A stretch of DNA of 64,000 bases from Heteronotia binoei (lineage: Eukaryota), in NCBI RefSeq assembly GCF_032191835.1, contig NC_083234.1:61070001-61134000 (forward strand), given 5' to 3'. The first letter of the stretch is position 1. Every line of letters begins with the position of its first letter. Shown here in pieces: positions 5,409 to 39,060 of the stretch. The translations under genes and the position numbers were made by a program. The notes beneath the pieces are model-generated. The model saw nothing but the letters and a program-made list of their open reading frames with translations, did no database searches and was not told the DNA's origin.

Positions 5409-5592
5409 TTGGAGGGCTGAGCCATGGCAGCAACGTCAGTGGTGTGGAGTGTTACAATCCCCTGGACCACGAATGGAAAGTGCTTGGATCTGTCTCAAGG
5501 CATCGGAGTGGCGGTGGAGTGGTTTCCCTCAATGGCTCCATCTACGTGGTGGGCGGCCATGACGGCGTGGTATGCTTTAGCAGTGTTGCAAG
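5409..5592 (+). CDS. KLHL20-like kelch protein, internal exon (kelch 1-2: VGGLSHGSNVSGVECYNPLDHEW...VGGHDGVVCFSSVAR)
   Basis: Acceptor ctcctgtttggtag, donor AAG|gtaatt, phase 1 to 2; aligns with KLHL20 VGGWCSGDAISSVERYDP...VGGHDGSSYLNSVER. Confidence 0.92.
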
Positions 5593-6378
5593 GTAATTCT
5601 GCATTTGGAATTGTTTACACCATTTGTAATCCACATCTCTTGCTGAGACTCAAGGCAGAAATTGATAAGTGCTTGGATTTTCCCTCTAAGGGATACCAGT
5701 TCTGGAAAAAGCATACTGCCTGTCCTCATAGTCTGCCATGGGTCTTTGCAGCTGGGTGGCCAGGAGAAATCCTCCTACTGCCCCAACTTCTATCTACTCC
5801 GCTATGTTCAAACTCCTAAGCTTTAGCCTCTGCAATCTAGACAGGTGGAGTGTGACTGATAGATAATAGCCATCAGCCTTCAGTGTTCATATTCAACCTG
5901 CAACTTCCGGCTAATTTTGAAAAAGCACCTGTAGCTATGGATTGAGATTAAAACCTGAAGAAAAAGTTATGGCCATGCAAAGTTAGGAGAGAAGAGGCAA
6001 TTAAGTGAGGATGAAGCCATGGGAGAAGGGATGAGTAGTCTCGTTCTCTGCTGCAAGTGGTCTTTCAAAACCCCAATCGTATCCTTTAAGTGCTGAGTTC
6101 TTAAAATCTGGCAGTTCTGAATCATCCCCCTGAGCCGTTCAATCAGACATTTGAGAAGAGGCTGAAGTGGTTGTCGAAGGTCTGTAAAATACCTATGTGC
6201 ATAGCAAGATGACAGCAATAGGTTTTGAGTTTCCAGAAGCAGAGGGAGCTGGGGACATAAATATCTGCCTTGATGAAGGGCTGGGATGTTTGTAGCGTGA
6301 GCAATGCAGCAAGTTGGGTGTATTTTCTCCCTTCCTTTTCAATGTATCAGGGTGGCGTAGTAAAGAGGGCTTTGGCAT

Positions 6379-6576
6379 CAGGGCTTTTTTTGGTAGGAAA
6401 AGCTCAGCAGGAACTCATTTGCATATTACACCACACCCCTGATCTCACCATTGTTTCACATGGGTTTTTTTAAGAAGAAGCCCAGCAGGGACTCATTTGC
6501 ATATTAGGCCACAACCCCTGAGGCCAAGCCAGCCAAAACTGCGTTCTTTTGTGTTCCTGCTCAAAAAAAAGCCCTG
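6379..6576. mobile_element. hAT MITE, CAGGGCTTTTT...AAAAAGCCCTG type carrying ATTTGCAT
   Basis: TIRs; TSD tttggcat/gttggcat (7/8); two internal subrepeats. Confidence 0.8.
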
Positions 6577-9038
6577 GTTGGCATCAGTAAAGAAACCTGG
6601 GTTCAAGTCCCTGCTCAGGCATCAATGCCACTGTAAAAACTTGGGCCAGAATCACCTGTTTCATAGGTGGCTGTGAAATGAAGAAGGGAAAGTCTATGAT
6701 TCTATGAAATCCCTCCATTACCTTACCTTGGTGGAAGCAGAAGTCACAAAAGTGAGGAATAAGAAAAATATTTAAAATGAATAGGAAGACACCCCCCAGT
6801 CTTGTTAGGTTGGATCAAGGCTTCATCTAGAGGAGGAACATCCTGTCCTAAGTCTTATTGTGATGCTTCCCACCCAAGACAGTTTCCCTACCATCTGCTG
6901 TCCCACGGCAAAGCAGGCAACTGGCCCACCAGCCTCAGAATTAGGAGGGAGAGGGAGTTATAGCACCTGGGTCCTCTTGGTTCCCCCAGATCAGCTCTCT
7001 GCACTCTTTCTCCCTCCCTGGTCTGAGCTCAGCCTGTTGCTTCCTTTCTAGCCAGGTGTGCTGCCTTCTCTTTTATGGGATTCCCTGGCCCCACCCCCCT
7101 ACCTGGCCTATCTCCAACCTCTTTCCACCTGCTCCATCTGGGAGACTAAAAAGAAAAGGAAGCCTTTCCTGCCTGCCTCTTTACCTTCCCCCTCTGCCCT
7201 GTTCTTTTGCCTTGCTGCTTTGTAACCTCTCCCCTTCTGGCCTTCCCCAAGTCTGAGCTGGACCTTTGTTTTCTGGACATGCCCCTCCCAACCTCTGCCT
7301 GGATTCCTGCCAGGGTTGCCAACCTCCAGGCAGCCCCTGGAGATCTCCTGCTATTATAATTGATGTCCAGTAGGCCAAGATCTGTTTCTCTGGAGAAAAT
7401 GGCTGCTTTGGAGGCTGGACTCTATGGTATTATATCCTGCTGGGGTCCTTCCTCTCCCCAAACTCCACCCTCCCTGGGCTTCACTCCCAAAACCTCCTGG
7501 TATTTCCCACCTCAGGGCTGGCAGCCCTACTTCCAGCCTTATTTTCAGCTTTCTGATCAAAGCCACCAAGTAATACACTGTCTTACAGTTTGCAAAAATA
7601 TATTACAAGGACTGTGTATAACACATAGTAAACAATACAATATTGATAGAGGCCAGCAGTGCTAAGGCCTTTTAAAGTAACAGAAACCCCAAGGGGGCCA
7701 AAAAACCCCCGTCCCCAAATAAATAAATATGTCCAAACCTGGAAATAGTCCAACTGAAATTCACAAGGTGGGTGCTCCCAAAGAACGTAGCTTCAACGCA
7801 GCCGCTTTCTTAAAAAGACGTCTCTCTAGATTTTGATGACGTTTCAATTCCTTCTTCAGTTTTAACGGCTCAATTGTTCAGGAACTACAATGATAATAAT
7901 AATTACCAACCAGGGTTTAAACAGAAAAATATACAAGTTACACTTAAACATATCAAAACAATAATTATAACAAAGGCTTACCCCTGTTCTCTAATCACAG
8001 CGTTAAGTTTCTCATTTTCATCAAGGAGCTACCCCACCTTAGTTTTAAAGGGATATTAGCTGCTGCTTACCAGGTGTAGCCAATGAAATTTAGATAAAAG
8101 CTGTATATTCTATCTCATTGTTAAAACCATATGGTTCATATGTTTTAAATCTAAATATAAATTTCGCCTCCATCTGTAATAAAATCTTTTTCACATCCTC
8201 TTGTTCGTATTTTTTATTTTTATATAGGGTACATAAATTACACAGAATCTCATGGCCTCTGGGCTATGCCCCATGCTGATGCAATGATCTTTCATTGGGG
8301 CATTTTCACACCCCTGGAAATTCTGGCCCGATGTTCTAACACCCGTGTAATTACTGCACGTGTGGACATGCCTGTATATCGCATCCCACATTTGCAAACG
8401 GCCAGATATATGATGTTCCGTGTTTTGCATCCTGAAAAGAAATTACATTGGATATTAAGTTCCTTCGTTTTATTCCAAAATGCTGTCCCCTCCAGAAAGT
8501 ATTTTGTAGAAAAAGCCTAGCAGGAAGTCATTTGCATATTAGGCCACACCCTTGTCACTGGGCCAGCCAGAATTGTGTTCCCACTTAAAAAAAAAAAAAA
8601 AAAGCTCTGATTTAAACGAATCCAGTAAAATATTAAAACAATACAGAATAACAAGGCATCTGGCATCAGTTTACACCCTCTCCATGTTCTGCCTCAGCAT
8701 GGGACCCAGCCACCTCCCTCTCCCGGCCTTCCTCACAGGGGTGAATCTGGGCCACTGCTTCCTCAGCTTTGGCAGCAGGGGCAGGGTTGAGTTGGGACTG
8801 AGAGGGGGCTCTTGGCATCAGTGCTTACAGGAAGCCCTCAGGGAGAGTTCTCTGTTTGCCCATCAGGAGCTGGTATTGGATAAGCGGCCTTTGAACATGG
8901 AGGTTTTATTTATCCATCAAGGCTCATAGCCATTGATGGATCTCTCCTCTGTGAATTTGTCAGATCGTCTTTAATGCCACAAAATATTTTGGCAATGAAG
9001 TCCACAGGTTAATGTGGCTTTGTGTGAAGTGCTTCACG

Positions 9039-9322
9039 TTGTCCAAATTTACAGAGTATCAGTTTAGTTGGGTGACCACCAAATCCTGCTCCTTATGGGG
9101 AGCATTCCACAATCATTAGAAGGCTGTTGGGGAGTTATATGAGACAGGGTCTTGTTTATGGTGGTCCTGAGATATGTTTCCCTTTGTCCAAATTTACAGA
9201 GTATCAGTTTAGTCAGGCAATCACCAAATTCTGCTCCTTATGGGGAACATTCCACAATCATTAGAAGGCTGGTGGGGAGTTATATGAGACAGGGCCTCGT
9301 TTGTGGTGGCCCTGAGATATGT
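9039..9322 (+). repeat. Tandem duplication, period about 145 bp, of an L2-like fragment
   Basis: ttgtccaaatttacagagtatcagtttagt...ctgagatatgtt occurs at 9039-9178 and 9184-9322. Confidence 0.85.
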
Positions 9323-9596
9323 TGGAAGTCCCTTTCTCAAGTTGTACATTTAATTCCACCCTTGTTAGCATCAGAAGATAAATAAAGACCATCTTCTTTT
9401 GGGGACTGAATTTAGTGGTGATAGTTAGGGTCACCAGGTCTCCCCTGACCACTGGGAGGAAGAGTTGCCAACTGCAGGTTAGAAAACACCTGGAGATTTG
9501 AAGGGGTGCCTGGGGAGGACAGAGACCTCAGTGGGGCACCATGCCATACAGTCTGCCCTTCAAAACATTTTCTCCAGGGGAACTGATCTCTGTAGT

Positions 9597-10211
9597 CAGG
9601 GCCGGCCCTAGCCCTTCTGGCGCCCTAGGCAGCAGTCACTGGGCCTGCTGCCTACTCACAAGTAGCCCTGCGGCTGCCACCTACTCGTGAGTAAGTGCGG
9701 GGCTAGCTAGAAGGGCTAGGGACAGCCCTGAGGGAAGGAAAGGTGCGGTGGCAGTGGTGACTGGGAGGGGCGGGGTAGGGCAGAAAGGGAGGGAAGGGAA
9801 GGAAAAGTGTGGCTGCGATGGGGGGGAGTGGAGAAGAAAGGGAGGGAAGGGAAGGAAAAGTGCGGCTGCGATGGGGGGCGGCGGTGGCGATGGGGGGTGG
9901 GAAGAGAAGGAAAAGTGCGGCTGCGATGGGGGGGCGGGAAGGGAAGGAAAAGTGCGGTGGCGGTGATGGGGGGCGGGCAGGGAGGGAAGGGAAGGACAAG
10001 TGCCATGGCGGACAGGCAAGTGGCGCACTGGGGGCGGGGTGGGTGGGTGGTGGTGGCTTGGAGGGAGCTAGCGGCAGCAGCAGCGGGGAGGGGGGCAAGC
10101 TAAGCACTTGCCTGGGGCACTGGAGGGGGGGGGTGAGAACCCAGTTTGCTGCCCCCGCCTTTCGGTGCCCTAGGCAACCGCCTAGTTTGCCTAGCGGGAG
10201 GGCCGGCCCTG
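9597..10211. mobile_element. CAGGGCCGGCCCT-terminated non-autonomous DNA transposon containing a G-rich minisatellite
   Basis: Inverted termini cagggccggccct/agggccggccctg; a related shorter copy ends near 4815; sits inside a TAGGGT-type MITE (about 9426-10231). Confidence 0.65.
9725..10005 (+). repeat. G-rich minisatellite (core gggaagggaaggaaaagtgcggctgcgatggggg)
   Basis: About five imperfect units of 40-55 bp; explains the low-complexity ORFs here. Confidence 0.85.
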
Positions 10212-11126
10212 CCTGGAGGCTGGCATCCCTAGTAGAGAATCTCCTTAATTTCACAGTTTAAGTTGGAGACATGTTTGTAATACCCCGATTCTCCTAGCAA
10301 GGCCTCTGACTATTAGAGATTTCTAAAGGCTCGTCTCTGCCTGCCGCTGTCGTTGAGCACATCAAAAAGCTGGACTGGACGGAAATGGTTGACAGAAAAT
10401 ATCAGCAAATATTAAAAAAGAATGACAGACAGGATCTTGGGCTGTCCCTAATTGGAGTCCCTCCATTCTCCTTCCTGGAGTGTCTTTGTGCTCACACCAA
10501 TAATCGGGATGGTATGAGACCTTCTCACTGCCTTTCTTAAAATACGGCAAACCTGGAGGGACGCTCCTCTTTCTTCCCTTGAGGCTTGCTGCGGCAAACG
10601 ATCTCCTGACAACACTGAAAATTGGCTTCGCACTTGATTAGTGGCATACTGCAAGTCACCGTGCGAGTAACCAGGTAATACCCTGAGGGAGAAAGCTGAG
10701 CTGCTGGCAGCAGGCAGGGAAGACCCAAAATATCAGTATTAACACAATCTGTGTGCATCTGGTGTCCTACTAAAGAAATGAGGCTAAAGTATGCCCCCCC
10801 ACCACCACACTGACCTTTTCTGTCCTCACTAGTGGATTTGGAAGGAGCCTGCTAAATCTTCCACTGCAGAACAAGACTGCTTTATGTACATTTCAGCATC
10901 TGCATATTCTTATTTTGCTAAATTCTACCTCCGAGTCATGAGGTAGGGCAAAGAACTAAGGAGCCCTTCCTTCCTGGCCAACAGAAATTGTAATCAGCCC
11001 TCTTCATTTGGCTTGAATTTACTAAACGCACTTCCAAGTCATAGGGACTAGAAACTTGACTGAATTTGGTACCCAGGACTGCTACTGTGTATTTGTACAG
11101 AATTGTGCAATTTATTTAATCAGAGA

Positions 11127-12414
11127 GGTCGTTGCAGTGTCTGACTTGGCCTCGCTGGTCTTCGTGTAGCTGGATGATGACCTCTCGGAGCCCTTCCCAA
11201 TAGGCACAGGTGTAAAGCAAGGCTGCGTTCTCGCGCCAACTCTCTTTACGATCTTCTTTAGCATGATGCTTCAAAGAGCCGCAGTAGATCTAGATGAGGA
11301 CGATGGTGTCTACATCCGCTATCGCACCGATGGCAGCCTGTTCAACCTGAGGCGACTAAAGGCCCACTCCAAGACAATGGAAAAACTCATCCGAGAGCTA
11401 CTGTTTGCTGATGATGCTGCACTCGTCTCCCACTCGGTATCAGCTCTGCAGCATATGACGTCCTGCTTTGCAGAGGCTGCCAAGCTATTCGGCCTAGAAG
11501 TTAGTCTGAAGAAGACAGAAGTTCTCCACCAGCCTGCACCCCAGGAAGATTATCACCCTCCCTGCATCACTGTGGGTGAATCAGTTCTGAAGACAGTCCA
11601 GCAGTTCAGCTACCTGGGGTGCATCATCTCCTCAGATGCCAAGATCGACAAGGAGATTGACAACAGGCTGGCAAAGGCAAACCGTGCATTTGGCCGACTG
11701 CACAAAAGAGTGTGGAGCAACAAGCATCTGAAAAAAGGCACAAAGATCAATGTTTACAAAGCAGTTGTGATGACAACCCTCATCTATGGCTCCGAATCGT
11801 GGGTTTTATACCGTCATCACCTGCGACTCCTTGAGCGCTTTCATCAGCGCTGCCTTCGCACCATCCTCAACATCCACTGGAGTGACTTTGTGACCAACAC
11901 TGAAGTCCTCAAGCGGGCAGAGGTTACCAGCATCGAGGCACTGCTGTTGAAGACGCAGCTGCGCTGGGCAGGGCATATTTCTAGGATGGAAAACCACCGC
12001 CTTCCCAAGATTGCCCTGTATGGCGAACTCTCCACCGGCCATCGAAATAGAGGGGCACCAAAGAAGAGGTACAAGGACTCCTTGAAGAAATCCCTTAGCA
12101 CCTGTCACATCAACCATCACCAGTGGTCTGACCTAGCCTCAGATCGCAAAGCATGGAGGCACACCATCCACCAGGCTGTCTCTTCCTTTGAGAACACACG
12201 CATAGCTGGTCTTGAGGACAAAAGGAGATTGAGGAAGAATCGCACTGCTACAGGACCAACCCTAAATCAGACTTTTCCCTGCAGCCGCTGTGGCCGGACC
12301 TGCCTGTCCCACATTGGTCTTGTCAGCCACCAGCGAGCCTGCAGCAAACGTGGACTATTGCACCCTTCTTAAATCTTCGTTCGCGAAGCCAAGCCGAGAG
12401 AGAGAGAGAGAGAG
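11127..12414 (+). mobile_element. 5'-truncated, 5'-inverted RTE-clade LINE; uninterrupted RT C-terminal frame 11179-12372
   Basis: GVKQGCVLAPTLF and LFADD RT motifs, C-terminal CxxC...H...C motif, (GA)n tail, 13-bp TSD atttaatcagaga at 11114-11126 and 12415-12427. Confidence 0.95.
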
Positions 12415-13363
12415 ATTTAATCAGAGACGGTCCATGTGCATGGTGCTAAACACTGCAAGAGAGTCATTTGACACTAAGGGTTTACAGTCTGAAATCTGGC
12501 ATGTGGATGGTGAAGGGTTGGGTAAAGGGGAGGGGAAGGGATACTCCTTCTTTCCACTGTCTTACTTTCAATGGAGAAGGTGTATTTAAGGTATGACAAG
12601 TGGGGGCCCACAAAACTCAAGAGGAGGAGAAATCCCATCTCCCTCCCCCCACTCTTTCACTAAGCCCAGCATGGCCCCTGGGCTCTCCGGCTGCTGCTGT
12701 TAGGTCCAGTGAGAAGCCCTGGGATGTTCAGCATTGCTGCCAGGCCCAGTGGAGCTCTTGGGCTCACCCTAAGCTGCACTACCACATCAAGGCCAGTGCA
12801 GAGTCCTGGGTTATGGAGCTGCTGCTGCTGTGGCCAGTATGACCCCCTGAACTCTTTGGCAAAGCCTCTAGGGTCTCCCTGGTTTGCACTGCTACTGCCA
12901 GGCCCAGCACGGCTCATGGATTGCATGAACAACAACAGTTTTGGTGGCGGAATACCCAGGGCAGCTCCCAGGTTGTGCACTGACCACCAGGCCCAGTGCA
13001 GGGCCCTGGGCTACGCTGCTGTTGGACCCAGTGCAGTTCCTGTGCTGCATGGCCACCACCATGGGAGCTAGTGTAAAGCCCTGGGCTGTGCAGCCACCAT
13101 CGTTGTACCCAGCGCAGCCCTCCAGGGCCGTCGCTGTTGACCACAGCAAGGGAAATATGTCCGGCACAAGTAAAAACTGACCTTGTGTCCGTAAATTGGA
13201 CTAGCAGCATAATATGGGATCATAAAGTGAGCTTGTTGGGTTGGGTCACTGGTCAGCCTTTGCCCAGTTTCCTTACTTTCTTGGGTAAGGAAAGGGTTTC
13301 CCCACTACCGAAGACCTTTCTTGCTGGAAGTGGCAGGGAATTAACCTGTGTCTTTCTGTATCC

Positions 13364-13647
13364 CAGAGGTGGTCAAACTGCAGCTCAGGAGCCACATGTG
13401 GATCTTTCACACATAATGTGTGGCTCTTGAAGGCCTCCCCCAGCCCCATAAGCCAGCTTGGGGTAGAGATTTCTCTTTAAATCACTTCTCCAAGCCAGCC
13501 AGCAGCTTGGAGAATGCATTTAAAGTTAAAGCTTCCTTCCTTCCTTCTTCACAGCCCTCAAACATCTGATGTTCATATCTTGCAGCTCTCAAATATCTGT
13601 CATTTATTCTATGGGGCTCTTATGTTAAGCAGGCTCGGCCACCTCTG
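13364..13647. mobile_element. hAT MITE (CAGAGGTGG...CCACCTCTG)
   Basis: TIRs; TSD ctgtatcc/ctgtatgc; related copies near 29186-29466 and 47362-47677. Confidence 0.75.
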
Positions 13648-14324
13648 CTGTATGCCAAGTGGGCACTGCCGCTGAGCCATGACCTGCCTGCTCCAGAGCA
13701 GAAACCCAATTTGCTCCCAGTTTCCGGCCCACGGCTAAGGATCCCTATAAAAACAGCTCTCTTGCTGCCCCCAATCATAATAGTGTTTTGCTGCACTCTC
13801 TGTATTGATTGCATTCTAACTGCTCTTTGCTGGTCTCTCTCCGTCTCCCCTGGGTTCCTTTAGCACACAAGTTATTGCTGCTTTGTCTTGACTGATAGCT
13901 TTGACAACCCAATTACTGCTATATTGCTTGCTAAAAGATGGCTCAGAGTCCCCAGCTCATTCCAACAAGTGTTTCATTTCAGGGCTGAAATCCTGTGTCT
14001 AAATATATATATATATATAATTGAGAGAGTGAGAGAGTGTCAGAAATGTGTCATGTGGTATTTCCAGCTCTGCTGTTGCTTCTCAGCAAGCCTGTTGCCC
14101 TTCCAAAAGGGATTGGTTGGCTGAAAGGCTAGCCCAGCCACCCCGAGAGGCAAGCCAAGAGGTTGGCTGGTGTCTTATTTTGGGTTTCGAGGTCAGCTTC
14201 CTTACAGCCATACTTTACTCTGCCATAATCTTTCCTCCTTACATGGCATGTGAGAGGAGCTTGCCCACATCAGCAACTTCTAATGACGGACATTTGCATT
14301 TCCTTTTTTTTCCCAATGCTGAAG

Positions 14325-14468
14325 GTACGAGCCTGAAACCAACTTGTGGAAGCGGGACGTGGCCCCAATCAGCGAAGCCAAGAGGGATGTGGCTGTTGCT
14401 GAGCTGGGAGGCTACCTGTATTGTGTGGGCGGCTATGATGGGCTGTTGTGCCTTAGCACTGTGGAGAG
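14325..14468 (+). CDS. KLHL20-like internal exon ([48 protein letters not shown])
   Basis: Acceptor cctttttttttcccaatgctgaag, donor GAG|gtaggc, phase 2 to 2; keeps the KLHL20 W-x-x-D-V-A-P signature. Confidence 0.93.
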
Positions 14469-15189
14469 GTAGGCTGCATCCCCTGGATAACTGTGTGGTG
14501 GTGGGACAGCAAAGGCGCCAACCTGTGGCATTGTTTAGCAGAGGTTTTCTGTTCACTTGACAGGACGTCTTTGGTGGTGGCTCCTCAGCTGTAAAACACC
14601 CTTCCTAAAGTGACTGGCCTAGTGCCTAACTTGTTACAGCATTACACACCAGGAGGAAACTTTTCTGTTTGCCCAGACAATTGGTTGGGTGTCTTAAGCT
14701 TGCATTTGCTGTTTCTATCTCTGTTGTTTTCACAGTTTTATTGCTCTGCTGCTTTTATTGGCTTTATTACTTCTGACTTGATATAGCATTTAAGCGTCAT
14801 TCTGCTGCTTTTGTTATTTTAGCCTTTCCCCTGCTCATTATCATGTTTCAGGCCCCTGAAGCAGTTTTTAAAGGGGGTTTAAATAAAAGTTCAATCAAGG
14901 TTTTTAATTAAAAACAAACAAACAAACAAACAGATGGCAGCCCACAGTCCTGGATGTGGCTAAAGCTCCAATGTTTACTAAATCAACTAAATATCTTTTG
15001 ATCCATTTTTTAAACAGAAACCCCTGACTGGGCAGCAATTTGAAAAAGTGCTTTTATACAATCTGGAGCTGGCAGAGGACATCTTAGAGATTCCCCGTTC
15101 TCTTCTTCTCATCAGAGTGCCTCTTCCAGTACCATCTGCACAGAGGCATTCCATTCCCACACACTTACACCTGTCAATAGCATTGCAGA

Positions 15190-15360
15190 CAGGGGTAGAA
15201 TTCTAGCAGGAGCTCCTTTGCATAATAGGCCACACACCCCTGATGTGGCCAATCCTCCAAGAGCTTACAAAAAAGAGCCTTGTAAGCTCTTGGAGGATTG
15301 GCTACTTCAGGGGTGCGTGGCCTAATATGCAAAGGAGCTCCTGCTAGAATTCCACCCCTG
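15190..15360. mobile_element. Palindromic hAT MITE
   Basis: The whole element is a hairpin; perfect 8-bp TSD attgcaga. Confidence 0.88.
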
Positions 15361-16931
15361 ATTGCAGACAATCTCTCATCCCTCCTACATGGGAAGGAAA
15401 GCTTCTTCTCCCAGCATGGAAGAGGCATTCCTGTCTTCTCTGTTGTGAGAGGGAATGCTTCTTCTGAGATGGTGTCTGCTATTCAGCAGCATTTTGATGG
15501 CAACCCTACTTTATTCTTTTGGCTTACAAAAGGAATGTTTACTTTCTGTAAGAGAAGCTTACAGAACGTACAAACATATATACAGCTTGGTAGGGATGTG
15601 AAATACAGATGGCTTTGTAAGTTCCACATGAAAGAGAGAAAGCCAGAGGTGAGCTTGAAATGCAGTGTTGGCGAAGGACTTGTCAAGAGCTTTGTGAGAG
15701 AAGAAAATGTATGGATAAATATTGGAGAGGGATGAGGACAGATGAGAGCGTGAAGACGAGACAATTGAGTGTAACAGTACATTCTAAGAAATAGGAGGGA
15801 AAGGAAATTGGAAGGCAGAAGGGCACGCTCTGGATAGGATGGCATGAGTCAGAGGGAGAAAAAAGGGCTGGAGATGTTGTTATGCAGGCCTGAAAAGGCT
15901 TCCAAAAAACAGACTAGAGTTGCTGAAAACAAGGCTGCAAACTGAAGGGCAGGATGAACAGCGGCAACAGAAAGCCTTCCCCATTTGTTAAATAGTGAGT
16001 TTGATGCAGTGGAGTTCAACACAGAACATGCTTTATTTCTCCTGCATACTAAAAGTCAACATGGCAGGACCGAGACCCTGCTTATATTCATGCAATAGAA
16101 ACACACCCACGCACCCGATTCCCATACCGAATCACGGCAGTCAAGTTTCTTGTCAAGACCGCTCATTGGTTGCTGTTCCAAGTTCAAATCTATCAGTGTC
16201 AACAGCATTTCCTGTGGTTGCCCAGATGCCTGCGCTGCTACCGCAAAGCAGTAAATTCAGTACATACCGCCATTCGTGTTGCTGCCCAGCTTAAAATTGC
16301 AGCATGTTAAGGCATGCTTCCACCCTCCATAGCTGCCGAAAGCCCAAGATGTTGCCACTGTAGTCTTCAGGTGGGACAGGCCAGCCTGACTGGGCAGCGG
16401 GGGGGAGGGAAAATTTTTAAATTTTCCATCTTTCGACCCGAAAAATCCCTGTCATGCAAATCAAACCTGTGACTTTGTTATTTTCACACCATTTTATGTT
16501 TCCTGACACCGTGAGTTTTTAATTTTTTTAAAAAAAAACTGATGGCAGCCCACACTTTTCCTGAACCTCTCTGAGTCTGTGGGCACATTTGGAATTCTAA
16601 CACAAGGTGGTGGGCACAACTACAGCATGGCGGCTGCAGGAGGGGGAGCCAACCACACAGAGGAAGCCCAAATGCAGAGGAGAAGAAGAGTAATTATAAA
16701 CCTACACTAAGGAAGAGGAGCGAAAGAGAAAAAAACCCAATACTGTGGACTAGGCAGCTGCTGTTGAAGCATTTATTGTAATGTGTATGGGTGATCAGAA
16801 GCCCTGCTGCACAAGAACCTCACCTGACTCCACCCATTTATAAAAACCCTTGATTGGCCCAGGAAAGGTGTCGGTAGGTGGTGTGGCTCCCATGGGAACC
16901 ACAGTGGAGACCCCATTGCACACCAATGTGT

Positions 16932-17148
16932 GGGGAGGGACGGTGGCTCAGTGGTAGAGCATCTGCTTGGGAAGCAGAAGGTCCCAGGTTCAATCCCTGG
17001 CATCTCCAAAAAAGGGTCCAGGCAAATAGGTGTGAAAAAACTCAGCTTGAGACCCTGGAGAGCCGCTGCCAGTCTGAGTAGACAATACTGACTTTGATGG
17101 ACCGAGGGTCTGATTCAGTATAAGGCAGCTTCATATGTTCATATGTTC
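16932..17148 (+). mobile_element. tRNA-derived SINE (Squam2-like) with CR1-type (atgttc)n tail
   Basis: A box ggtggctcagtggtag, B box ggttcaatccc; tail tcatatgttcatatgttc; four copies in the window. Confidence 0.85.
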
Positions 17149-18280
17149 ACCAGATGTTCATCCTAAAATCTACACTTTTCAGTGGTCTGTATGTAATCTT
17201 GGGTTCCCATTCATCAGGTAGGGGTGGGGATCACCTGATTTGGGAGCTTTTGTGGAGCACCCCCACCCCAAATAACAATGTCCCCTGGAAGTGATGCCAT
17301 CACATCAGGGACATCATGTGGCAATGCTCTGGTTTGAGGGCAAAACACCATAGAGTTTTGCCCTCAAACCAGAGAATTGCCACACAACATTCCCAATATG
17401 ATGATGTCACTTCTGCATGATGTCATCATGTCAGGGACATTGCTGTTTGGGATAAATCCATACACCCCCAATCTCCAGGAATTTTCCAACTTTTTGTAGG
17501 AAACCCTACCTTGTATTTAGAAATTACCATGTGGAAGAATCCAAACTAGACCCCATCATCTTAATAAGGTTGTCAGGATCCCCTGCCCACTGGTGGGGGA
17601 TTAGGGGGTAGGGTTGCCAGCTCCAGGTTGGGAAACTCCTGGAGATTTGGGAATGGAGCCTGGGGAGGACAGGGACCTCAGTGGAGTTCAATACCATAGA
17701 GCCCACACTCCAAAGCAGCCATTCTCTGTAGGGGAACTGATCTCCGTAGTCTGGAGATGAGCAGTAATTCTGGGAGATCCCCAGGTCCCACCTGGAGGCT
17801 GGCATCCAATAATAATGATGTACTCTATTCCTTTGCTCCTCAAAGTTAGTCTTTCTGATTTCCAGAGGAGATTCTAGAATAGAAAAATCTAAACTTTATG
17901 GTCCAAAGACCTCCTTGAGGGAATTTCTTGGGCTCGGGTAGGGTAGGCTCTGTCCCATTTTACAAAGCCCTACTTAAGAGAAAAGTTGAGAGTTGCACAA
18001 GAGGTTGGGCTGGTAGCACCAGACACACATCCCTTAAGCAAGATCAGCAGTGCTTCTTCAAGTGCTGAATGAAAAGGGTCCTCAGGCCAGTGGTGGTCTG
18101 CAGGCTGTAATGTGGATGCCACCCCCCAAAAAAGTCACTTTGAGCTCTTCTTTCATCCATTTATAACAGTCATCAACAGTTATGTGCTTGAGATTCAGGA
18201 TGGGTTTTTTTGGGAGAAGAAGGGGTATAGTTTGGGGTTGGATTGGCCATCTCTAACTTTGCTTCCCAGATCCTATCATC

Positions 18281-18449
18281 CGGGGTGGAATTCTAGCAGG
18301 AGTTCCTTTGCATATTAGGCCGCACACCCCTGATGTAGTCAATCCTCCAAGAGCTTACAAGACTCTTTTTTGTAAGCTCTTGGAGGATTGGCTACATCAG
18401 GGGATGTGGCCTAATATGCAAAGGAGCTCCTGTTAGAATTCCACCCCTG
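18281..18449. mobile_element. Palindromic hAT MITE
   Basis: Same family as 15190-15360; TSD ctatcatc. Confidence 0.85.
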
Positions 18450-18462
18450 CTATCATCTAAGT

Positions 18463-18891
18463 CAGGGGTGTCAAACATGCGGCCCAGGGGTTGAATCATG
18501 CCCCTGGAGGGCTCCTATCAGCCCCCCAAGCAACTTACTGCTTCCTTTTCCCCCTCTTGCTTCCTTCTGCATCACTGCTTGCTTTTTCAGGCTTGCTCAA
18601 TCACACAGGAACTACAGAGCAAAGCTCCATTTGGGAGGAAGTGGGGAAAGGAGAGCTAGCTTTGCCAGGCGCTCTCAATTGCACAGCAGAGCTACTGAGC
18701 CAAGCCTCTCTTCCTCCTGTTGGCTGAGGCTCAGAAAGCCAGTGAAGTGGATTAGGCTGAGTGTGTGTGTTTGTCTGTGTCCTTTATAAAGTTTATATCT
18801 CCCTGACCTGGCATTACATTTTATGACACACATGGCCCGGCCCGACAAGGTCAAGATCCTGCCCTCATAGCAAATGAGTTCGACACCCCTG
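18463..18891. mobile_element. hAT non-autonomous element (CAGGGGTGTCAAAC termini)
   Basis: TIRs; TSD atctaagt/atttaagc (6/8); homologous to 31120-31726. Confidence 0.75.
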
Positions 18892-18949
18892 ATTTAAGCA
18901 TTACTTTTACTATTCATGCAGTCTCACAATTGTGCATGTACTTTTTTAG

Positions 18950-19083
18950 GTATGACCCTTTGCTAAATAGGTGGTGCAGAGTGGCACCCATGAATCGCCG
19001 CCGGAGGGGCCTCGGCCTGGCTGTGCTTGATGGTTACCTGTATGCTGTTGGGGGGTCCGATGGCTGTTCCCCATTATATTCAG
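18950..19083 (+). CDS. KLHL20-like internal exon ([44 protein letters not shown])
   Basis: Acceptor tacttttttag, donor CAG|gtaaat, phase 2 to 1; matches KLHL20 [44 protein letters not shown]. Confidence 0.94.
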
Positions 19084-19685
19084 GTAAATGGGAGAGACTG
19101 GTGGCAGATCTGATTTGGTCAGAGGAAGTTTGGAAAGCGAGGAATTTTGCTCTTGAATGTTCAGCACTAAATAAATAAATAGAGTGACATTCCAACTTCC
19201 TTTAAAGTGGCCTTGCCCAATCAGCTTAAAAGTCTACCTAATTCCACAACTAGTGTTACCATCACTGCTTTGGCAAATGCAGGGAGATAGTGCCTGGGGA
19301 GGGCGGCATTTTGGGAGGATGTGCTGTCACTTCTAGCTGATGCTCTAGGCTGCCTCCCCTAGTGTCTATGATCTTTGCCATAGGGAATAGGGAAAATTCC
19401 TAGAGCGTAGGGAAAATTCCTACAGCATCATTATGTAGTAGCCATTTCCCCCCCTCCTCAGTTCTTCAGGCTCAGGAAATTGAGGCTGGGGGCAGGTTAT
19501 TCTCTCCACCCAGGCAGTTAAATGGGAAGCATGCCCACAGTATCCTTTACCATTAAAACACAACTCCTCCCATAAAGGTGCAGACCCCTTCTCTTGCTCT
19601 GCATGCCAGCTAAAGCTTGCCCAGGTCAAACCTGGCACCCACAAACCAGCAACCTTCTAATGACAAGTCCAGGATGACCTTGTTG

Positions 19686-19980
19686 AGGTTCTCCTTAAGG
19701 GAAGAATGTACTAGTGACATATGCAGTCTATGAATAATCCATTCCTTTACAAACAAAAAAGTTTGATCAGAGACTCTAGCAGTGAAAGTAGAACCAACAA
19801 CTGAGAAAGAGGTCACTTTGTCTTCTGTAGAGGTTCTTCTTAAGAGGAGAATGTACTAGTGACACATGCAGTCTACAAATAACCCATTCATTCAGAAACG
19901 AAAAGATTAATCAGACCCTCGAGCAGTGCAAGAGACAGAACCAGCAACTGAGAAAGAGGACACTCTTTCTTTTGTCACAG
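19686..19980 (+). repeat. Tandem duplication (145 and 150 bp) of the intron 3' end including the splice acceptor
   Basis: aggttctccttaag...ctttgtcttctgtag (19686-19830) is followed by aggttcttcttaag...ctttcttttgtcacag (19831-19980). Confidence 0.85.
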
Positions 19981-20189
19981 TGGAGCGTTACAATCCGACG
20001 GAAGATAGGTGGACCCCTTGCTCTCCCCTGCGGACCTGTAGAGAGTACCTCGGGTGCACCACCTTCCAAGCGAAGATCTATGCTGTCGGCGGGCGGGATG
20101 ACCTCACAGAACTGCGCAGTGTGGAGCGGTTTGATCCTGTTGCCAATGAATGGTCTGCTGTAGTGCCCATGAAGTCCAAGAGGAGCAAG
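19981..20189 (+). CDS. KLHL20-like internal exon (VERYNPTEDRW...VGGRDDLTELRSVERFDP...MKSKRSK)
   Basis: Acceptor ctttcttttgtcacag, donor AAG|gtattg, phase 1 to 0; matches KLHL20 VGGRDDTTELSSAERYNP. Confidence 0.94.
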
Positions 20190-21023
20190 GTATTGGGTCG
20201 CAGCTATGTTATGGGAACTCGGGGGAAATGATGGTTGGGAAAGCCAGCAGATGGCCCTTTTCTGAAGGACTGTTCATGTCTTCAGTAGGAACCAACCCTC
20301 ATGTTTTGCACATTAGAAAATCTCAGTAGTGCACACTTCCCAAGATTTCAAAAGGAAGTGGACTTAAAAACATAAAACCATTTCACTGTTACGGTAACCC
20401 AAGCTTCCATGCTTGCTGAAAGGCAAAGCCTTCTTTATCTTTCCAGCTCTGATGGAGAAGGAGGGGGGAGTAAACAGTAATATAGTTGCTCCAAAAAAGT
20501 CCTGTCAGCCTGGTGGAAAATCATGCAAATTTATTTTATTTTTTTTTAAACATATGATAAGTTTATTAGAAATTCCAAGTTATACAGAACTTTGTTGGGT
20601 GAAGTAGTATCAAGTAGATTAATTCCATATATAACAAAATTTTACTATGCATAAAGTACTATGGTATATATAACATTGCAGAACATCTTTTTTTAGCATT
20701 TAAGATAACATGCAGTTCGCCAATCAATCAATCTAGAGGTAAATTAATTAATTAATAAATATCTTCTAAGGGTAAATTAACTGGTAATTGGGCTAGAATT
20801 TTGACTCTTAAGCTAAGAATACTGCCTTGCTCCATCCCGAACCAAACAAAAGGGAATATTTAAATACAAGGAGAAAGAATGGATAGCATAAGTTAGAAAG
20901 AATTATAGTGAGAGAAATTGAAGGTAGGTTGTGTTAATAGGTAAAATGCAAATTTAAAAGATGTGCAAACACAAATATCAACTGAATATTGCCTTTAGTG
21001 TGGTGAGGGCTGCCTGTTGCTTG

Positions 21024-21309
21024 GAGAGCCAGTTTGGTGTAGTGGTTAAGTGTGTGGACTCTTATCTGGGAGAACCGGGTTTGATTCCCCACTCCTCCAC
21101 TTGCAGCTGCTGGGATGGCCTTGGGTCAGCCATAGCTCTGGCAGAGGTTGTCCTTGAAAGGGCAGCTGCTGTGAGAGCCCTCTCCAGCCCCACCCACCTC
21201 ACAGGGTGTCTGTTGTGGGGGAGGAAGGTAAAGGAGATTGTGAGCCGCTCTGAGACTCTTCAGAGGGGAGGGCGGGATATAAATCCAATATCATCTTCTT
21301 CTTCTTCTT
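21024..21309 (+). mobile_element. tRNA-derived SINE (Squam3-like) with (tct)n tail
   Basis: gagagccagtttggtgtagtggttaag head, ggtttgattccc B box; near-identical copies at 34354, 55759 and 63478. Confidence 0.85.
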
Positions 21310-21530
21310 GGCCATGGCAGGAGAGGTGACAGTGATTCGCGGTCCCATCCTGGACCCAAGAATCACTGTGCCCCTGAAGCTGATATCCCCATCTATGGCC
21401 AGTACTGTCAAATGAACCTGGTAATTGGATTCTTCATTAACATTTGAGTCAATGGGTTTCGGCATGTAGTGTTGGCCTCTGCCTTCTTAACTAAAAACCT
21501 GAGAATAACTGCATTTCTTCCTTCGTGCAG

Positions 21531-21637
21531 GTCAGCCTTGCTGCTGCAAATGGCTATCTCCTAGCCATTGGGGGCTATGATGGTACCGTCCACGTGACCA
21601 CAGTAGAGGCATTTGACCTGGAGATGAACACGTGGAG
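21531..21637 (+). CDS. KLHL20-like internal exon (VSLAAANGYLLAIGGYDGTVHVTTVEAFDLEMNTWR)
   Basis: Acceptor tttcttccttcgtgcag, donor GAG|gtagat, phase 0 to 2; matches KLHL20 [36 protein letters not shown]. Confidence 0.93.
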
Positions 21638-22718
21638 GTAGATTGGTGTTTTGAGGCATCTGTTTCTTCTTAACTTCCTTGATGAATGTCCACTGAAATT
21701 TTCAAAGTTCTGAGAGCGGCAACCCAAGTTACTTCTTCTGGGGCACAACTGAAGGTTTACTGTTTTTCAAGTGTATGAGACAGAGTAAGGATAATCCTTC
21801 CCAAGAAGAGCCCATGCCTTGTTTCTGCATGAGTCTTTGCTTTGAATCTCCTGCCGAATGGAAGATGGCAAGCTCTGATCAGTCACTCATGCAGATGCAA
21901 GAGGTTCCTCCTCCAAGAAGGTCATTCTAATTCCAGAAAGCAACTGAACAGTCTGTTCACGCTTGATTCATTGTTTTAGGACAGGCTGATTGGAAAAGAA
22001 TTAAATTGTTTTCAATTCGCTGCAGCGTTTAGTTCTTTCTCTTAATTTGCTTCTTGTCTCCTCTTCCTCTTTACATTATTGGCCATCTTGATATAATTGT
22101 ATGTGTAAAGTAGTGGGTTCAGATGCTTGAGTGATTTCAGTATAGCCCTTTATTAGCAAGAAACACACGTAGCAAGCTGCAACTATATACACAGAAACTC
22201 CACCCAAAACACACCTCCAGCAATAAACAACCCAATAGAAAAACAGGTGCTTGGAACCCTCATTTGCATGGGCTTCATTCAAATAGGTATTGCCTGATTG
22301 GCTGGCTCAGCAATGGCAGCCGCTCTGAATGCAGCTGCAAGGAGCCTCTCAAACAATGGGTCTTCATTTGAAGCTCCCAGTACACTACAGCGTGCAAGAT
22401 TACACATCAAGATTTTTGTATGCTGGGGCTGGGACTCTTGCTCTGTGATTAGACACCACTGAGAGAGGACCACGACACAACTGTATATATGAATCACTCC
22501 AAGATTGCTTTTTGGCAGAGTTTTTATCAATGCATGCATGCATCTTAGCAATGAGGAGGGAGAGAGGCACAAAGGAATGGTCAGGCTTGCAGTGCGCTGC
22601 ACATGTGCCAAGTTTGGAAATAAAAAACCTAAATGTTGGTTCTAGGTTGAAAATGAGTCCAGGTAGTGATCTGGAACTTCCAAATCCATGTGGTTTTTTT
22701 TTTTGCTGTTTCTTGCAG

Positions 22719-22821
22719 GCGCTTTGGCAACACGCAAACTTGCCACCCCGGTGGAGGCGTCACTGCCATCAACATGGCTCCCTGCGATCGGGAAACTTCC
22801 CAAGTGGTCCGGAGCAGATAG
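22719..22821 (+). CDS. KLHL20-like terminal coding exon (RFGNTQTCHPGGGVTAINMAPCDRETSQVVRSR*)
   Basis: Acceptor tttttgctgtttcttgcag, phase 2, TAG at 22819-22821; matches KLHL20 [23 protein letters not shown]. Confidence 0.9.
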
Positions 22822-23112
22822 AAAGCCAATTCTGTTTTCTGGTTTGGTGGGACGACTAGTTAGGCCTGAACAATGAAAGAAGGAGGGGAGAGGGATTGGT
22901 GGCAGGCAAGGACTATGGCCAGAAAGAGTGAGAGAGATGGTATGGCAAAGGTGGGACAGAATTTCCTTCCCACCTGAATGGAAGTTCAGATGTGTCCATT
23001 TTGCAGGAGGTAAAAGGGAAATACTTTATCTTCCCAAGGCCCACTGTATTTCTCCTCTACAACACTCCCCCCCCCCCACCTGTCACCCACCCTGTTCAGC
23101 CATGCTTAGACT

Positions 23113-38289: not shown

Positions 38290-39060
38290 AAAAGCCATTA
38301 AGCCATGCACTTTCCACAATTGCCTGAAGATGGCGCCAGAGCGTTACAAACGGACCCATTTAGGCAGGGAAATGCCCCACGGGAGCAAGGCAGGAAAGGA
38401 GAAATGTTAGTCTTGAAAGCGCCAAGTGACATCTGCAGACGCCTTTTCCTAGCTTTAGTTGCAAAGGCCTCCCCCTCCTCTCCTCCCCTCCCCTCTCTAG
38501 CGCCTGGCGTTTGCCCAGAGGGACTACAGCTCCTAGCAAAGATTCCCCGCAGCTGTAGAATTGCCCGCCGAGCAGGAAGAAACAAGCCCATTGGCGCCCT
38601 TTTCGTGGCAAATCGCAACTTTCCCCTCCCCCGACTTGTTGCTCCTTCCTTGCCTGAAGAAGGCGAGATCGAGCCCGGGAAAGCGGCTGGCGGGCTGGCT
38701 GCGATGCTCTGGGGATCTCGCAACCTAGCGTCGGGCGCCTTCTTCGCTTGCAGGATGGAAGCTGCCCAGGGCTGGGGTTTCTGGGCTCGGGCGGGCAGCT
38801 GTTGGGCATCTGGGAGGGCGGAGGGCCAAGGAGAACCCTGCTGGTGAGCTGCCCCCGCCAGCTGATCTTATGCTTTCTCAGGCTGCTGGAGGCGCGCCGG
38901 CTCGCTTGTGGAGCGATGCTCTGCCCCGAGGCCGCTCCAGCAGGGCTAGAGGCCAGCGACAGTCCCGCCGCTCAGCAGCTGGAAGGGACCCGATCCGCCG
39001 CCACCGAATGCTACACCAACCAGACCTTTGTGTTTGACGATGGCTGCTCGCACAGGTAAC
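38290..39060. promoter_or_regulatory. CpG island / probable KCNT1 promoter and 5' exon region
   Basis: Sharp rise in GC and CpG content in non-repetitive sequence overlapping the first KCNT1 coding exon; YY1-like AAGATGGCG at 38327-38335. Confidence 0.75.
38916..39055 (+). CDS. KCNT1: KCNT1 (Slack, Na+-activated K+ channel) first coding exon MLCPEAAPAGLEASDSPAAQQLEGTRSAATECYTNQTFVFDDGCSH(R/S)
   Basis: YTNQTFVFDDG matches the human KCNT1 N-terminus GGYTNRTFEFDDGQCAPR, followed by a phase-2 donor CAG|gtaaca; lies in a CpG island. The start codon choice is uncertain. Confidence 0.85.

What the first reader, a model, noticed from the sequence alone, without database searches (positions are those of the whole stretch)
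5409..22821. Divergent KLHL20 paralogue with a remodelled, charge-reversed substrate pocket
Seen: six exons give a six-blade kelch propeller co-linear with human KLHL20 but only roughly half identical by eye, although true KLHL20 orthologues are nearly invariant in vertebrates. Aligned positions differ: RRKHLGC becomes CREYLGC (K498 to E and H499 to Y, codons at 20043-20048), YRRLGGG becomes TCHPGGG (L592 to P), and GGWC becomes GGLS. Established (recalled, verify): K498, H499 and L592 line the KLHL20 pocket that binds the DAPK1 LPDLV degron, including its acidic residue. Inference: a CUL3 adaptor paralogue, not recalled from the human KCNT1 locus, that recognises a different, possibly basic, degron.
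Basis: partly seen in the sequence, partly recalled or inferred. Interest (0 to 1): 0.7.

Follow-up and report, generated by a model that had tools for sequence, protein, structure and literature searches.

The report
Kelch-only KLHL20 paralogue beside KCNT1
The six exons are a real, selectively maintained gecko gene, but it is an ancient KLHL20 duplicate that has lost the CUL3-binding half and keeps only a propeller with an altered binding pocket, always sitting just upstream of the KCNT1 channel gene in fish and squamates.

Summary
Six GT-AG exons (5409-22821, + strand) join in frame and encode a six-blade kelch propeller that is co-linear with KLHL20 and about 55% identical to it. K498E, H499Y, L592P and W326L are all present at the stated codons.

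- **Age of the gene.** It is not gecko-specific. It belongs to a clade with rattlesnake, sturgeon, eel and teleost proteins (support 100/98). A squamate-only duplication is rejected (AU p = 0.002).
- **Pocket residues.** All 13 clade members sampled carry E498 and H591-P592. True KLHL20/diablo from cnidarians to mammals keeps every DAPK1-contact residue unchanged.
- **Domain content.** Complete orthologues are 331-348 aa. They have a short conserved N-terminus (MGVYNEQGE), a disordered linker and the propeller. No BTB or BACK domain appears in the proteins or in 10 kb upstream of five loci. A CUL3 adaptor role is therefore unlikely.
- **Synteny.** In snake, pike and eel the gene lies 2.5-5 kb upstream of a KCNT1-type channel gene on the same strand. 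The window shows a weak match to that channel's first exon.
- **Selection.** dN/dS against Gekko kuhli is 0.075, so it is not a pseudogene.

Exons 1-2 lie off the window. No RNA evidence was obtained.

The parts
5409..5592 (+). Kelch exon A (third coding exon of the gene by homology; blade I/II). Begins with 2 bases of a split codon; the first base comes from an off-window exon.
   Evidence: AG acceptor and GT donor read; Kelch_1 E 1.6e-11; co-linear with KLHL20 chain 23-80; 57/59 identical to Gekko kuhli P0166.
5417..5419 (+). CTG = Leu at the position of KLHL20 Trp326 (DAPK1 contact). Trp is kept in fish paralogues and lost in squamates.
14325..14468 (+). Kelch exon B
   Evidence: Splice sites; Kelch_1 E 2.2e-7; 47/47 identical to G. 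kuhli.
18950..19083 (+). Kelch exon C
   Evidence: Splice sites; Kelch_1 E 1.3e-10.
19981..20189 (+). Kelch exon D (blades IV/V). Holds the CREYLGC motif.
   Evidence: Splice sites; Kelch_1 E 3.4e-17; ungapped alignment to KLHL20 chain 177-244.
20043..20048 (+). GAG-TAC = Glu-Tyr at the positions of KLHL20 Lys498-His499. Glu498 is invariant in all 13 paralogues sampled.
21531..21637 (+). Kelch exon E. His (CAC, 21591-21593) replaces KLHL20 Tyr567.
   Evidence: Splice sites; Kelch_1 E 1.3e-9.
22719..22821 (+). Kelch exon F: the closing strand and the C-terminus, with TAG stop at 22819-22821.
   Evidence: 30/33 identical to G. kuhli.
22744..22749 (+). CAC-CCC = His-Pro at the positions of KLHL20 Arg591-Leu592. 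The HPGG motif is invariant in the paralogue clade.
38964..39041 (+). Context: candidate first coding exon of the downstream KCNT1-type channel gene (…CYTNQTFVFDD).
   Evidence: Weak tblastx match (E 0.004 in a small search) to the first exon of the channel gene that follows the kelch gene in Crotalus. It lies in the relatively GC-rich 38-40 kb bin of the window (GC 0.509).

Best explanation
The six exons are the propeller-coding part of an intact gene under purifying selection. The gene is an ancient truncated duplicate of KLHL20, at least as old as the common ancestor of ray-finned fishes and tetrapods. The duplicate kept the BACK-kelch linker and the six-blade propeller. It lost the BTB and BACK domains and gained a short new first exon (MGVY[N/K]E[Q/R]GE). 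It has stayed immediately upstream of the KCNT1-type channel gene on the same strand.

Likely mechanism (inferred). It acts as a stand-alone peptide-binding propeller of about 330 aa. Its top-face pocket was rebuilt once, early in the clade's history: Lys498 to Glu, Arg591-Leu592 to His-Pro, and loss of the basic cluster. That pocket has been conserved since. It should therefore no longer bind LPDLV/DAPK1-type ligands and should recognise a different, less acidic and possibly basic, motif. Lacking a BTB domain, it cannot dimerise with KLHL proteins or recruit CUL3 on its own. It would act as a non-catalytic binder (shield, competitor or scaffold), or reach another partner through its conserved N-terminal motif.

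Shown here: gene structure, orthology, domain loss in orthologues, pocket signature, synteny and selection. Inferred: ligand type, lack of CUL3 binding, and biological role.
For: Exon anatomy.

Closest proteins: Gekko kuhli partial protein at 95% and Crotalus 'kelch-like protein 20, partial' at 68%, both co-linear over all six exons.

Tree of kelch domains: the paralogue clade of 2 squamates and 11 ray-finned fishes has support 100/98 and an internal topology that follows the species tree. It sits inside the KLHL20/diablo family (100/99).

AU tests: a squamate-specific duplication is rejected (delta lnL 43.6, p 0.0018). A vertebrate-wide duplication is not rejected (p 0.48).

Signature residues: E498 and H591-P592 in 13 of 13 paralogues. 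W326, C356, H373, K498, H499, R515, Y567 and L592 are invariant in 17 of 17 true KLHL20/diablo proteins from Hydra to rodent.

Kelch-only architecture: Pfam lists; no BTB/BACK by tblastn; the conserved MGVYNEQGE start and a linker homologous to the KLHL20 linker.

Synteny: the kelch gene is followed by an Ion_trans_2/RCK/BK_channel_a gene on the same strand in Crotalus (4.7 kb), Esox (5 kb) and Anguilla (2.5 kb). The stickleback protein is named 'kcnt1b isoform X21'. The window has a weak exon-1 match.

Selection: dN/dS is 0.075 against G. kuhli (dS 0.33, 287 codons, no gaps or stops) and 0.14 against Crotalus.

Structure: the AlphaFold model of the snake orthologue has pLDDT 88, a disordered N-terminal 30 residues, and a propeller that superposes on KLHL20-DAPK1 6GY5 at TM 0.96 and 1.6 A.
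Against: Exons 1-2 of this gecko's gene lie off the window. G. kuhli exon 2 is 9.2 kb upstream of exon A. Their integrity, and the absence of BTB exons further upstream, are therefore not shown for this genome.

No transcript evidence was obtained. The three RNA runs available covered only interspersed repeats and none of the exons.

By raw identity the gecko exons are nearer to true KLHL20 (55%) than to the fish paralogues (46-50%). Clade membership therefore rests on the likelihood tree, where long branches could attract. It is independently backed by synteny, the shared N-terminal exon and the signature residues.

Only two tetrapod lineages (a gecko and rattlesnakes) turned up in the protein searches.

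No ligand, CUL3 or binding data exist.
Confidence: 0.62

Rival explanations
1. One reading: a full BTB-BACK-Kelch CUL3 adaptor paralogue whose BTB/BACK exons lie upstream of the window.
For: The propeller derives from a CUL3 adaptor family. The upstream exons of this gecko's gene are not in the window.
Against: Complete orthologues start with Met and are 331-348 aa with kelch motifs only. No BTB/BACK similarity appears in 10 kb upstream of the gene in snake, G. kuhli, sturgeon, pike or eel. In Crotalus the upstream space is taken by unrelated genes.
Confidence: 0.07
2. A decaying or unexpressed pseudogene copy of KLHL20 in geckos.
For: No RNA support was obtained. It evolves fast relative to KLHL20. 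The G. kuhli model is partial and flagged UNVERIFIED_CONTAM.
Against: All six exons are open and all ten exon-intron junctions lying within the window are canonical. dN/dS is 0.075 over 287 codons at dS 0.33. The signature pocket residues are retained.
Confidence: 0.05
3. A squamate-specific recent duplicate of KLHL20 that only resembles the fish kelch-only genes through long-branch attraction.
For: Raw identity is higher to KLHL20 than to the fish paralogues. Both groups have long branches.
Against: The AU test rejects squamate genes grouping with vertebrate KLHL20 (p 0.0018). Shared derived E498, H591 and P592. The shared MGVY first exon and truncated architecture. The same position upstream of the KCNT1-type gene in snake, pike and eel.
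Confidence: 0.04
4. The kelch exons are not an independent gene but an alternative 5' part or isoform of the KCNT1 transcription unit.
For: The stickleback product is named 'kcnt1b isoform X21'. The two genes are head-to-tail and 2.5-5 kb apart in several species.
Against: The kelch reading frame ends in its own stop codon in every species, including TAG at 22819 here. The called products are separate. No channel sequence is fused to any kelch protein seen.
Confidence: 0.12

Closest known systems
KLHL20 (human Q9Y2M5; kelch domain structures 6GY5, 5YQ4, 8CIA) and its invertebrate orthologue 'kelch-like protein diablo'
   Same: Six-blade kelch propeller, co-linear, about 55% identical. The snake orthologue model superposes on 6GY5 at TM 0.96 and 1.6 A. 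Same family clade (100/99). The linker preceding blade I is homologous.
   Different: No BTB or BACK domain in orthologues. Of the eight DAPK1-contact residues named in PMC6720452, the gecko keeps only H373 and R515. K498 is reversed to Glu and L592 becomes Pro. It evolves many times faster. It sits beside KCNT1, not at the KLHL20 locus.
Fish 'kelch-like protein 20 / diablo' models of 331-348 aa (e.g. Acipenser P0258, Anguilla P0181, Esox P0232, Gasterosteus 'kcnt1b isoform X21' P0269)
   Same: Same clade, same kelch-only architecture, same E498/H591-P592 signature, and the same position upstream of the KCNT1-type gene.
   Different: 46-50% identity to the gecko exons. Fish keep Trp326 and have a longer basic, Ser-rich linker. 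Teleosts carry a one-residue insertion in blade V.
Kelch-only substrate receptors KLHDC2, KLHDC3 and KLHDC10 (CUL2 receptors; from my own knowledge)
   Same: Stand-alone kelch propeller of about 350-450 aa used to bind short peptide motifs.
   Different: Not close relatives. Those proteins reach CUL2 through a C-terminal BC/Cul2 box. The protein here has only 10-20 residues after the last blade, and no such box was looked for or seen.
KEAP1 kelch domain
   Same: A kelch pocket whose charge complements the ligand (basic pocket, acidic ETGE motif). This illustrates how a K-to-E change would redirect specificity.
   Different: About 36% identity and a different subfamily. KEAP1 has BTB-BACK.

Membership tests
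KLHL20/diablo orthologue group | Invariant substrate-pocket residues W326, C356, H373, K498, H499, R515, Y567, L592 | tested here: not met
   17/17 true KLHL20/diablo proteins keep all eight. The gecko gene has L, S, H, E, Y, R, H, P at these positions (window codons read).
KLHL20/diablo orthologue group | Falls within the vertebrate KLHL20 clade on a tree | tested here: not met
   It groups with the kelch-only fish proteins (100/98). Forcing the squamate genes together with vertebrate KLHL20 is rejected (p-AU 0.0018). The tree used the G. kuhli protein (95% identical) as a stand-in for the window gene.
KLHL20 family in the wide sense (KLHL20 plus its duplicates) | Kelch domain nearer to KLHL20/diablo than to KLHL17, 2, 5, 8, 18 or KEAP1 | tested here: met
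   Family branch support 100/99. KLHL20 is the best natural PDB hit for exons A and D and for the fold.
BTB-BACK-Kelch (KLHL) CUL3 adaptors | N-terminal BTB domain with 3-box, and a BACK domain | tested here: not met
   This cannot be read in the window, because the upstream exons are off it. It is not met in the orthologues. Pfam shows kelch only, and tblastn finds no BTB/BACK in five loci with 10 kb upstream flanks.
BTB-BACK-Kelch (KLHL) CUL3 adaptors | Binds CUL3 | not testable with these tools
   Needs co-immunoprecipitation or pull-down.
Kelch-repeat beta-propeller proteins | Six Kelch_1 repeats closing into a propeller | tested here: met
   Kelch_1 hits on exons A-E. The orthologue model gives a confident six-blade propeller (pLDDT 88).
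Kelch-only KLHL20 paralogue beside KCNT1 (clade defined here) | E498 plus the H591-P592 signature | tested here: met
   GAG at 20043-20045; CAC-CCC at 22744-22749.
Kelch-only KLHL20 paralogue beside KCNT1 (clade defined here) | Lies just upstream of a KCNT1-type channel gene on the same strand | tested here: inconclusive
   Clear in Crotalus, Esox and Anguilla. In the window there is only a weak match (E 0.004) to the channel's first exon at 38964-39041.
Kelch-only KLHL20 paralogue beside KCNT1 (clade defined here) | First exon encoding MGVY(N/K)E(Q/R)GE, followed by a linker exon | not testable with these tools
   It is not in the window. The G. kuhli linker exon is 9.2 kb upstream of exon A, which falls beyond the window start.

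The most novel reading that the evidence does not exclude
The kelch-only KLHL20 duplicate is functionally tied to the KCNT1 (Slack) channel gene it has preceded, head to tail and only a few kb away, since before ray-finned fishes and tetrapods split. It might be co-transcribed from a shared upstream promoter. Its product might bind the channel's large cytoplasmic domain or a regulator of it through the rebuilt pocket. If so, non-mammalian vertebrates would have a dedicated Slack-channel partner that mammals lost.
Probability: 0.1. Interest if true: 0.75.

Novelty: new variant of a known kind. Interest (0 to 1): 0.45.

Why it matters
KLHL20 is one of the most conserved CUL3 adaptors and is now used for targeted protein degradation. 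This is a natural, long-lived derivative that discarded the ligase-recruiting half and fixed a charge-reversed pocket. It is therefore a ready-made comparison for how kelch pockets encode specificity. It also raises the question of what a BTB-less propeller does.

The gene carries the automatic names 'kelch-like protein 20', 'diablo' or even 'kcnt1b isoform' in databases. These names mislead orthology tables and expression studies in fish and reptiles. Its persistent linkage to KCNT1, an epilepsy gene, also deserves a look in fish models. Neither of the two paper searches made here (for KLHL20 with KCNT1, and for KLHL20 with 'ohnolog') found a paper describing it.

Tried and rejected
- **Representative search.** The whole-library search with exon D alone was swamped by giant multi-kelch proteins, because scores sum over repeats. 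The orthologue P0070 only emerged after re-scoring all hits exon by exon.
- **RNA evidence.** The only three RNA runs on offer were small metatranscriptomic runs. They matched interspersed repeats (18800-18950, 20914-21366, 23028-23300) and none of the exons. This gives no evidence for or against expression.
- **Exon 1 in the window.** ORF listing, a regex for MGVY and tblastn with orthologue N-termini found nothing on the + strand upstream of 5409.
- **KCNT1 in the window.** tblastx of the Crotalus downstream region at E 1e-4 hit only repeats. Motifs recalled from memory for the KCNT1 N-terminal region found nothing specific. Only a permissive, region-limited tblastx gave the weak exon-1 match.
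- **Stickleback locus.** The exact-match look-up of stickleback P0269 found no locus.
- **Sturgeon locus.** It shows no called channel gene within 10 kb downstream.
- **N-myristoylation.** The conserved Met-Gly start was considered but not claimed. Residue 6 is Glu, which by my knowledge of N-myristoyltransferase preferences is unfavourable.
- The spliced six-exon protein has no reference, so it was never assembled, searched, aligned or folded. Exons were handled one by one by reference. The stored G. kuhli and Crotalus proteins stood in for it in the tree and the fold. dN/dS was summed over per-exon codon alignments.


Full report

Yes. Reading the sequence around each proposed exon gives six exons on the + strand, each with an AG acceptor and a GT donor:
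- A 5409-5592
- B 14325-14468
- C 18950-19083
- D 19981-20189
- E 21531-21637
- F 22719-22821 (TAG stop at 22819-22821)

The lengths are 184, 144, 134, 209, 107 and 103 nt. The split codons (R, R, V, R) fit together in one frame with no stop, giving about 293 residues. Exon A starts with two bases of a codon whose first base must come from an exon upstream.

Pfam Kelch_1 hits exons A-E with E-values from 2e-7 to 3e-17. Among natural solved structures KLHL20 is the best and co-linear match. Exon D residues 1-68 align without gaps to chain 177-244 of 6GY5, and exon A to 23-80. Summed exon by exon, identity to true KLHL20 of carp, jerboa or catshark is 139-140 of 251 residues, about 55%.

The construct in PMC6720452 starts at M303. 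With that numbering:
- GAG-TAC at 20043-20048 is E-Y at K498-H499.
- CAC-CCC at 22744-22749 is H-P at R591-L592.
- CTG at 5417-5419 is L at W326.
- CAC at 21591-21593 is H at Y567.

K498 makes the salt bridge to DAPK1 Asp1338. H499 hydrogen-bonds it and, together with L592, sandwiches Leu1339. W326 and H373 pack on the LPDLV motif, and R515 and Y567 contact the C-terminal part of the peptide.

**2. What is it related to?**

A whole-library search with exon D was dominated by giant multi-repeat proteins. Re-scoring the hits exon by exon singled out one 393-aa protein that is co-linear with all six exons at 52-77% identity. It is 'kelch-like protein 20, partial' of Crotalus tigris, clustered with C. 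adamanteus and C. horridus entries.

A word search with it found two groups:
- A partial Gekko kuhli protein. This is 95% identical to the window exons. Its model wrongly reads 14 intronic residues in front of exon D.
- A set of fish proteins of 331-348 aa, annotated 'kelch-like protein 20' or 'diablo', whose precomputed Pfam lists lack BTB and BACK. One stickleback entry is named 'uncharacterized protein kcnt1b isoform X21'.

A second search with the sturgeon member added about twenty more teleost members. It also returned true KLHL20 from the same or closely related fish species (Esox, Periophthalmus, Mastacembelus, Sphaeramia) and from a lizard (Podarcis). So this is paralogy, not a fast orthologue.

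**3. Phylogeny**

A maximum-likelihood tree of 37 kelch domains has these features:
- The KLHL20/diablo family is separated from KLHL17, 2, 5, 8, 18 and KEAP1 (100/99).
- Within that family the kelch-only proteins form one clade (100/98).
- Inside the clade the order follows the species tree: squamates, then sturgeon, eel, salmoniform/esociform fishes and spiny-rayed fishes.
- True vertebrate KLHL20 has terminal branches of 0 to 0.1 (0 to 0.03 outside hagfish), and Podarcis and a frog are identical.
- The gecko and snake branches are 0.25 each, on a 0.44 stem.

Forcing the squamate genes to join vertebrate KLHL20, which would mean a squamate-specific duplication, costs 43.6 log-likelihood units and is rejected (p-AU 0.0018). 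Joining the whole paralogue clade to vertebrate KLHL20, which would mean a vertebrate-stage duplication, costs 1.0 unit and is not rejected (p 0.48).

The tree used the G. kuhli protein as a proxy for the window gene. The joined six-exon protein has no reference and was deliberately not built.

From general knowledge of vertebrate paralogons: KLHL20 (human 1q25) and KCNT2 (1q31) lie on the 1q counterpart of the 9q33-34 region that holds KCNT1 and PSMD5. Origin in the early vertebrate genome duplications would fit, but this is inference.

**4. Pocket**

In the alignment all 17 true KLHL20/diablo sequences, from Hydra and Nematostella to a rodent, keep W326, C356, H373, K498, H499, R515, Y567 and L592.

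All 13 paralogues have Glu at 498 and His-Pro at 591-592, within the motifs R-E-x-x-G-C and H-P-G-G. Other changes in the paralogues:
- Position 499 is Asn in 10 of the 13 paralogues (Tyr in gecko).
- R496 is lost.
- Trp326 is kept in fish but replaced in both squamates (Leu in gecko, Thr in snake).

It is a clade-defining state, fixed before ray-finned fishes and tetrapods split and held since. That is the pattern expected of a functional pocket with a new specificity.

An AlphaFold model of the snake orthologue, read from its MGVY start (326 aa, 34-row alignment), gives pLDDT 88 and pTM 0.84. The first 30 residues are disordered. The propeller superposes on the KLHL20-DAPK1 complex 6GY5 at TM 0.96 and 1.6 A over all 285 residues. 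The aligned positions are therefore structurally equivalent.

**5.

Full-length orthologues begin with a conserved MGVYNEQG(E/A)A (snake: MGVYKERGEQ). A variable basic, Ser-rich linker follows. Its last part (sturgeon KTVRYGEVVFAVGGW) is homologous to the KLHL20 BACK-kelch linker (KPIRCGEVLFAVGGW). Then comes the propeller.

Evidence on BTB and BACK:
- Pfam finds only kelch motifs in the snake and sturgeon proteins.
- tblastn with residues 1-300/312 of KLHL20 (BTB-BACK) finds nothing at E<=1 in the window, nor in the Crotalus, G. kuhli, pike and eel loci with 10 kb upstream flanks.
- In sturgeon it finds only a 35-residue match to the linker.
- The kelch-domain control gives 13-19 HSPs per locus.

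In Crotalus the gene has two small 5' exons: MGVYKERG at L001:10108, and the linker at 10814-10909. The space further upstream is occupied by a galactosyltransferase gene on the other strand and a PSMD5-like gene.

In G. kuhli the linker exon, open and with a good donor, lies 9.2 kb upstream of exon A. In the window, exon A is only 5.4 kb from the edge. Exons 1-2 of this gene are therefore off the window, and none was found in it. Without a BTB domain the product cannot recruit CUL3 the way KLHL proteins do.

**6. Synteny**

The kelch-only gene is followed on the same strand by a gene whose product carries Ion_trans_2, Slo-like RCK and BK_channel_a domains:
- Crotalus: 4.7 kb gap, 1278 aa product
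- Esox: 5 kb gap, 1303 aa product
- Anguilla: 2.5 kb gap, 1288 aa product

No channel gene is called within 10 kb in sturgeon. In the window, 38964-39041 (+) encodes ...CYTNQTFVFDD, which matches the end of the Crotalus channel gene's first exon (...CYANQTFIFDD). The match is weak (E 0.004 in a restricted search), but it lies in the relatively GC-rich 38-40 kb stretch (GC 0.509), 16 kb after the kelch stop.

**7. Is it functional in geckos?**

Per-exon codon alignments were summed without joining the exons:
- Against G. kuhli: dN 0.025, dS 0.33, dN/dS 0.075 over 287 codons, with no gap or stop.
- Against Crotalus: dN/dS 0.14, with saturated dS.

This excludes a pseudogene for the part seen.

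Transcript evidence could not be had. The three RNA runs offered held 7-9% of the sampled words, and all of that was interspersed repeats. The exon bins have depth 0, apart from a trace of 1.66 in one run over the bin holding exon E.

**8. Mechanism and rivals**

Best reading: a stand-alone propeller that binds a peptide motif different from the KLHL20 LPDLV type. Glu498 would repel the Asp that Lys498 binds, and Pro592 and Leu/Thr326 remove the hydrophobic clamp. It would act without CUL3 as a binder, shield or scaffold, or through a partner of its conserved N-terminal motif. That step is inferred.

Rivals:
- Hidden BTB exons (0.07).
- Pseudogene (0.05).
- Squamate-specific duplicate grouped by long-branch attraction (0.04). 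This is rejected by the AU test and contradicted by synteny and the shared first exon.
- Part of the KCNT1 transcription unit (0.12). This is suggested by the stickleback naming, but every kelch frame ends in its own stop.

**9. Novelty**

The proteins are in public databases under automatic and misleading names. No paper linking KLHL20 and KCNT1 in this sense, or describing a KLHL20 ohnologue, was found in the searchable library. I rate it a new variant of a known kind: a BTB-less, pocket-remodelled derivative of a CUL3 adaptor, conserved across ray-finned fishes and two squamate lineages. It was not seen in mammals, birds or amphibians, though that absence rests only on protein-database searches.

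Earlier notes of this scan told me the genome is a gecko and pointed to the KCNT1 CpG island. Both were checked only partly here.

Noticed in passing
window 11263-12372 (+), inside the intron between exons A and B: A 369-aa ORF with a partial reverse-transcriptase match (RVT_1 E 4.6e-6, just below Pfam's cut-off): a LINE fragment.
   Followed up: partly
window 20914-21366; also 18800-18950 and 23028-23300: Interspersed (SINE-like) repeats in the introns and the 3' flank. They are covered at huge summed depth by contigs of three metatranscriptomic RNA runs at 90-99% identity. They account for all the 'RNA signal' on this stretch.
   Followed up: partly
window 9039-9323 and 9782-9988: Two intronic repeat arrays: a 145-bp unit x2 (91% match) and a G/A-rich 53-55-bp unit x2.9. 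The second produces long spurious Pro/Ser- or Gly/Lys-rich ORFs on both strands (9681-10261).
   Followed up: no
window 38748-39059 (+): An ORF ending ...CYTNQTFVFDD in the relatively GC-rich 38-40 kb stretch. It weakly matches the first coding exon of the KCNT1-type channel gene that follows the kelch gene in Crotalus. It is probably the KCNT1 first exon.
   Followed up: partly
L002 (Gekko kuhli, GCA_051903775.1) gene 10001-22045; protein P0166: The deposited G. kuhli model is partial. It lacks exons 1-2, reads 14 intronic residues (EPATEKEGTLSFVT) in front of exon D, and is labelled UNVERIFIED_CONTAM, although it is plainly a gecko gene. Window introns are about 85-87% identical to G. kuhli, so the window comes from a different gecko species.
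   Followed up: partly
Proteins P0181, P0232, P0258, P0269 and about 20 others: RefSeq and UniProt name the fish kelch-only paralogues 'kelch-like protein 20', 'kelch-like protein diablo' or 'kcnt1b isoform X21'. Orthology and expression tables that rely on names will confuse them with true KLHL20.
   Followed up: partly
Alignment A1, columns 1-100: The N-terminus MGVYNEQG(E/A)A is conserved from snake to teleosts in an otherwise fast-evolving, disordered tail. Its role is unknown. The Met-Gly start hints at N-myristoylation, but Glu at position 6 argues against it.
   Followed up: no
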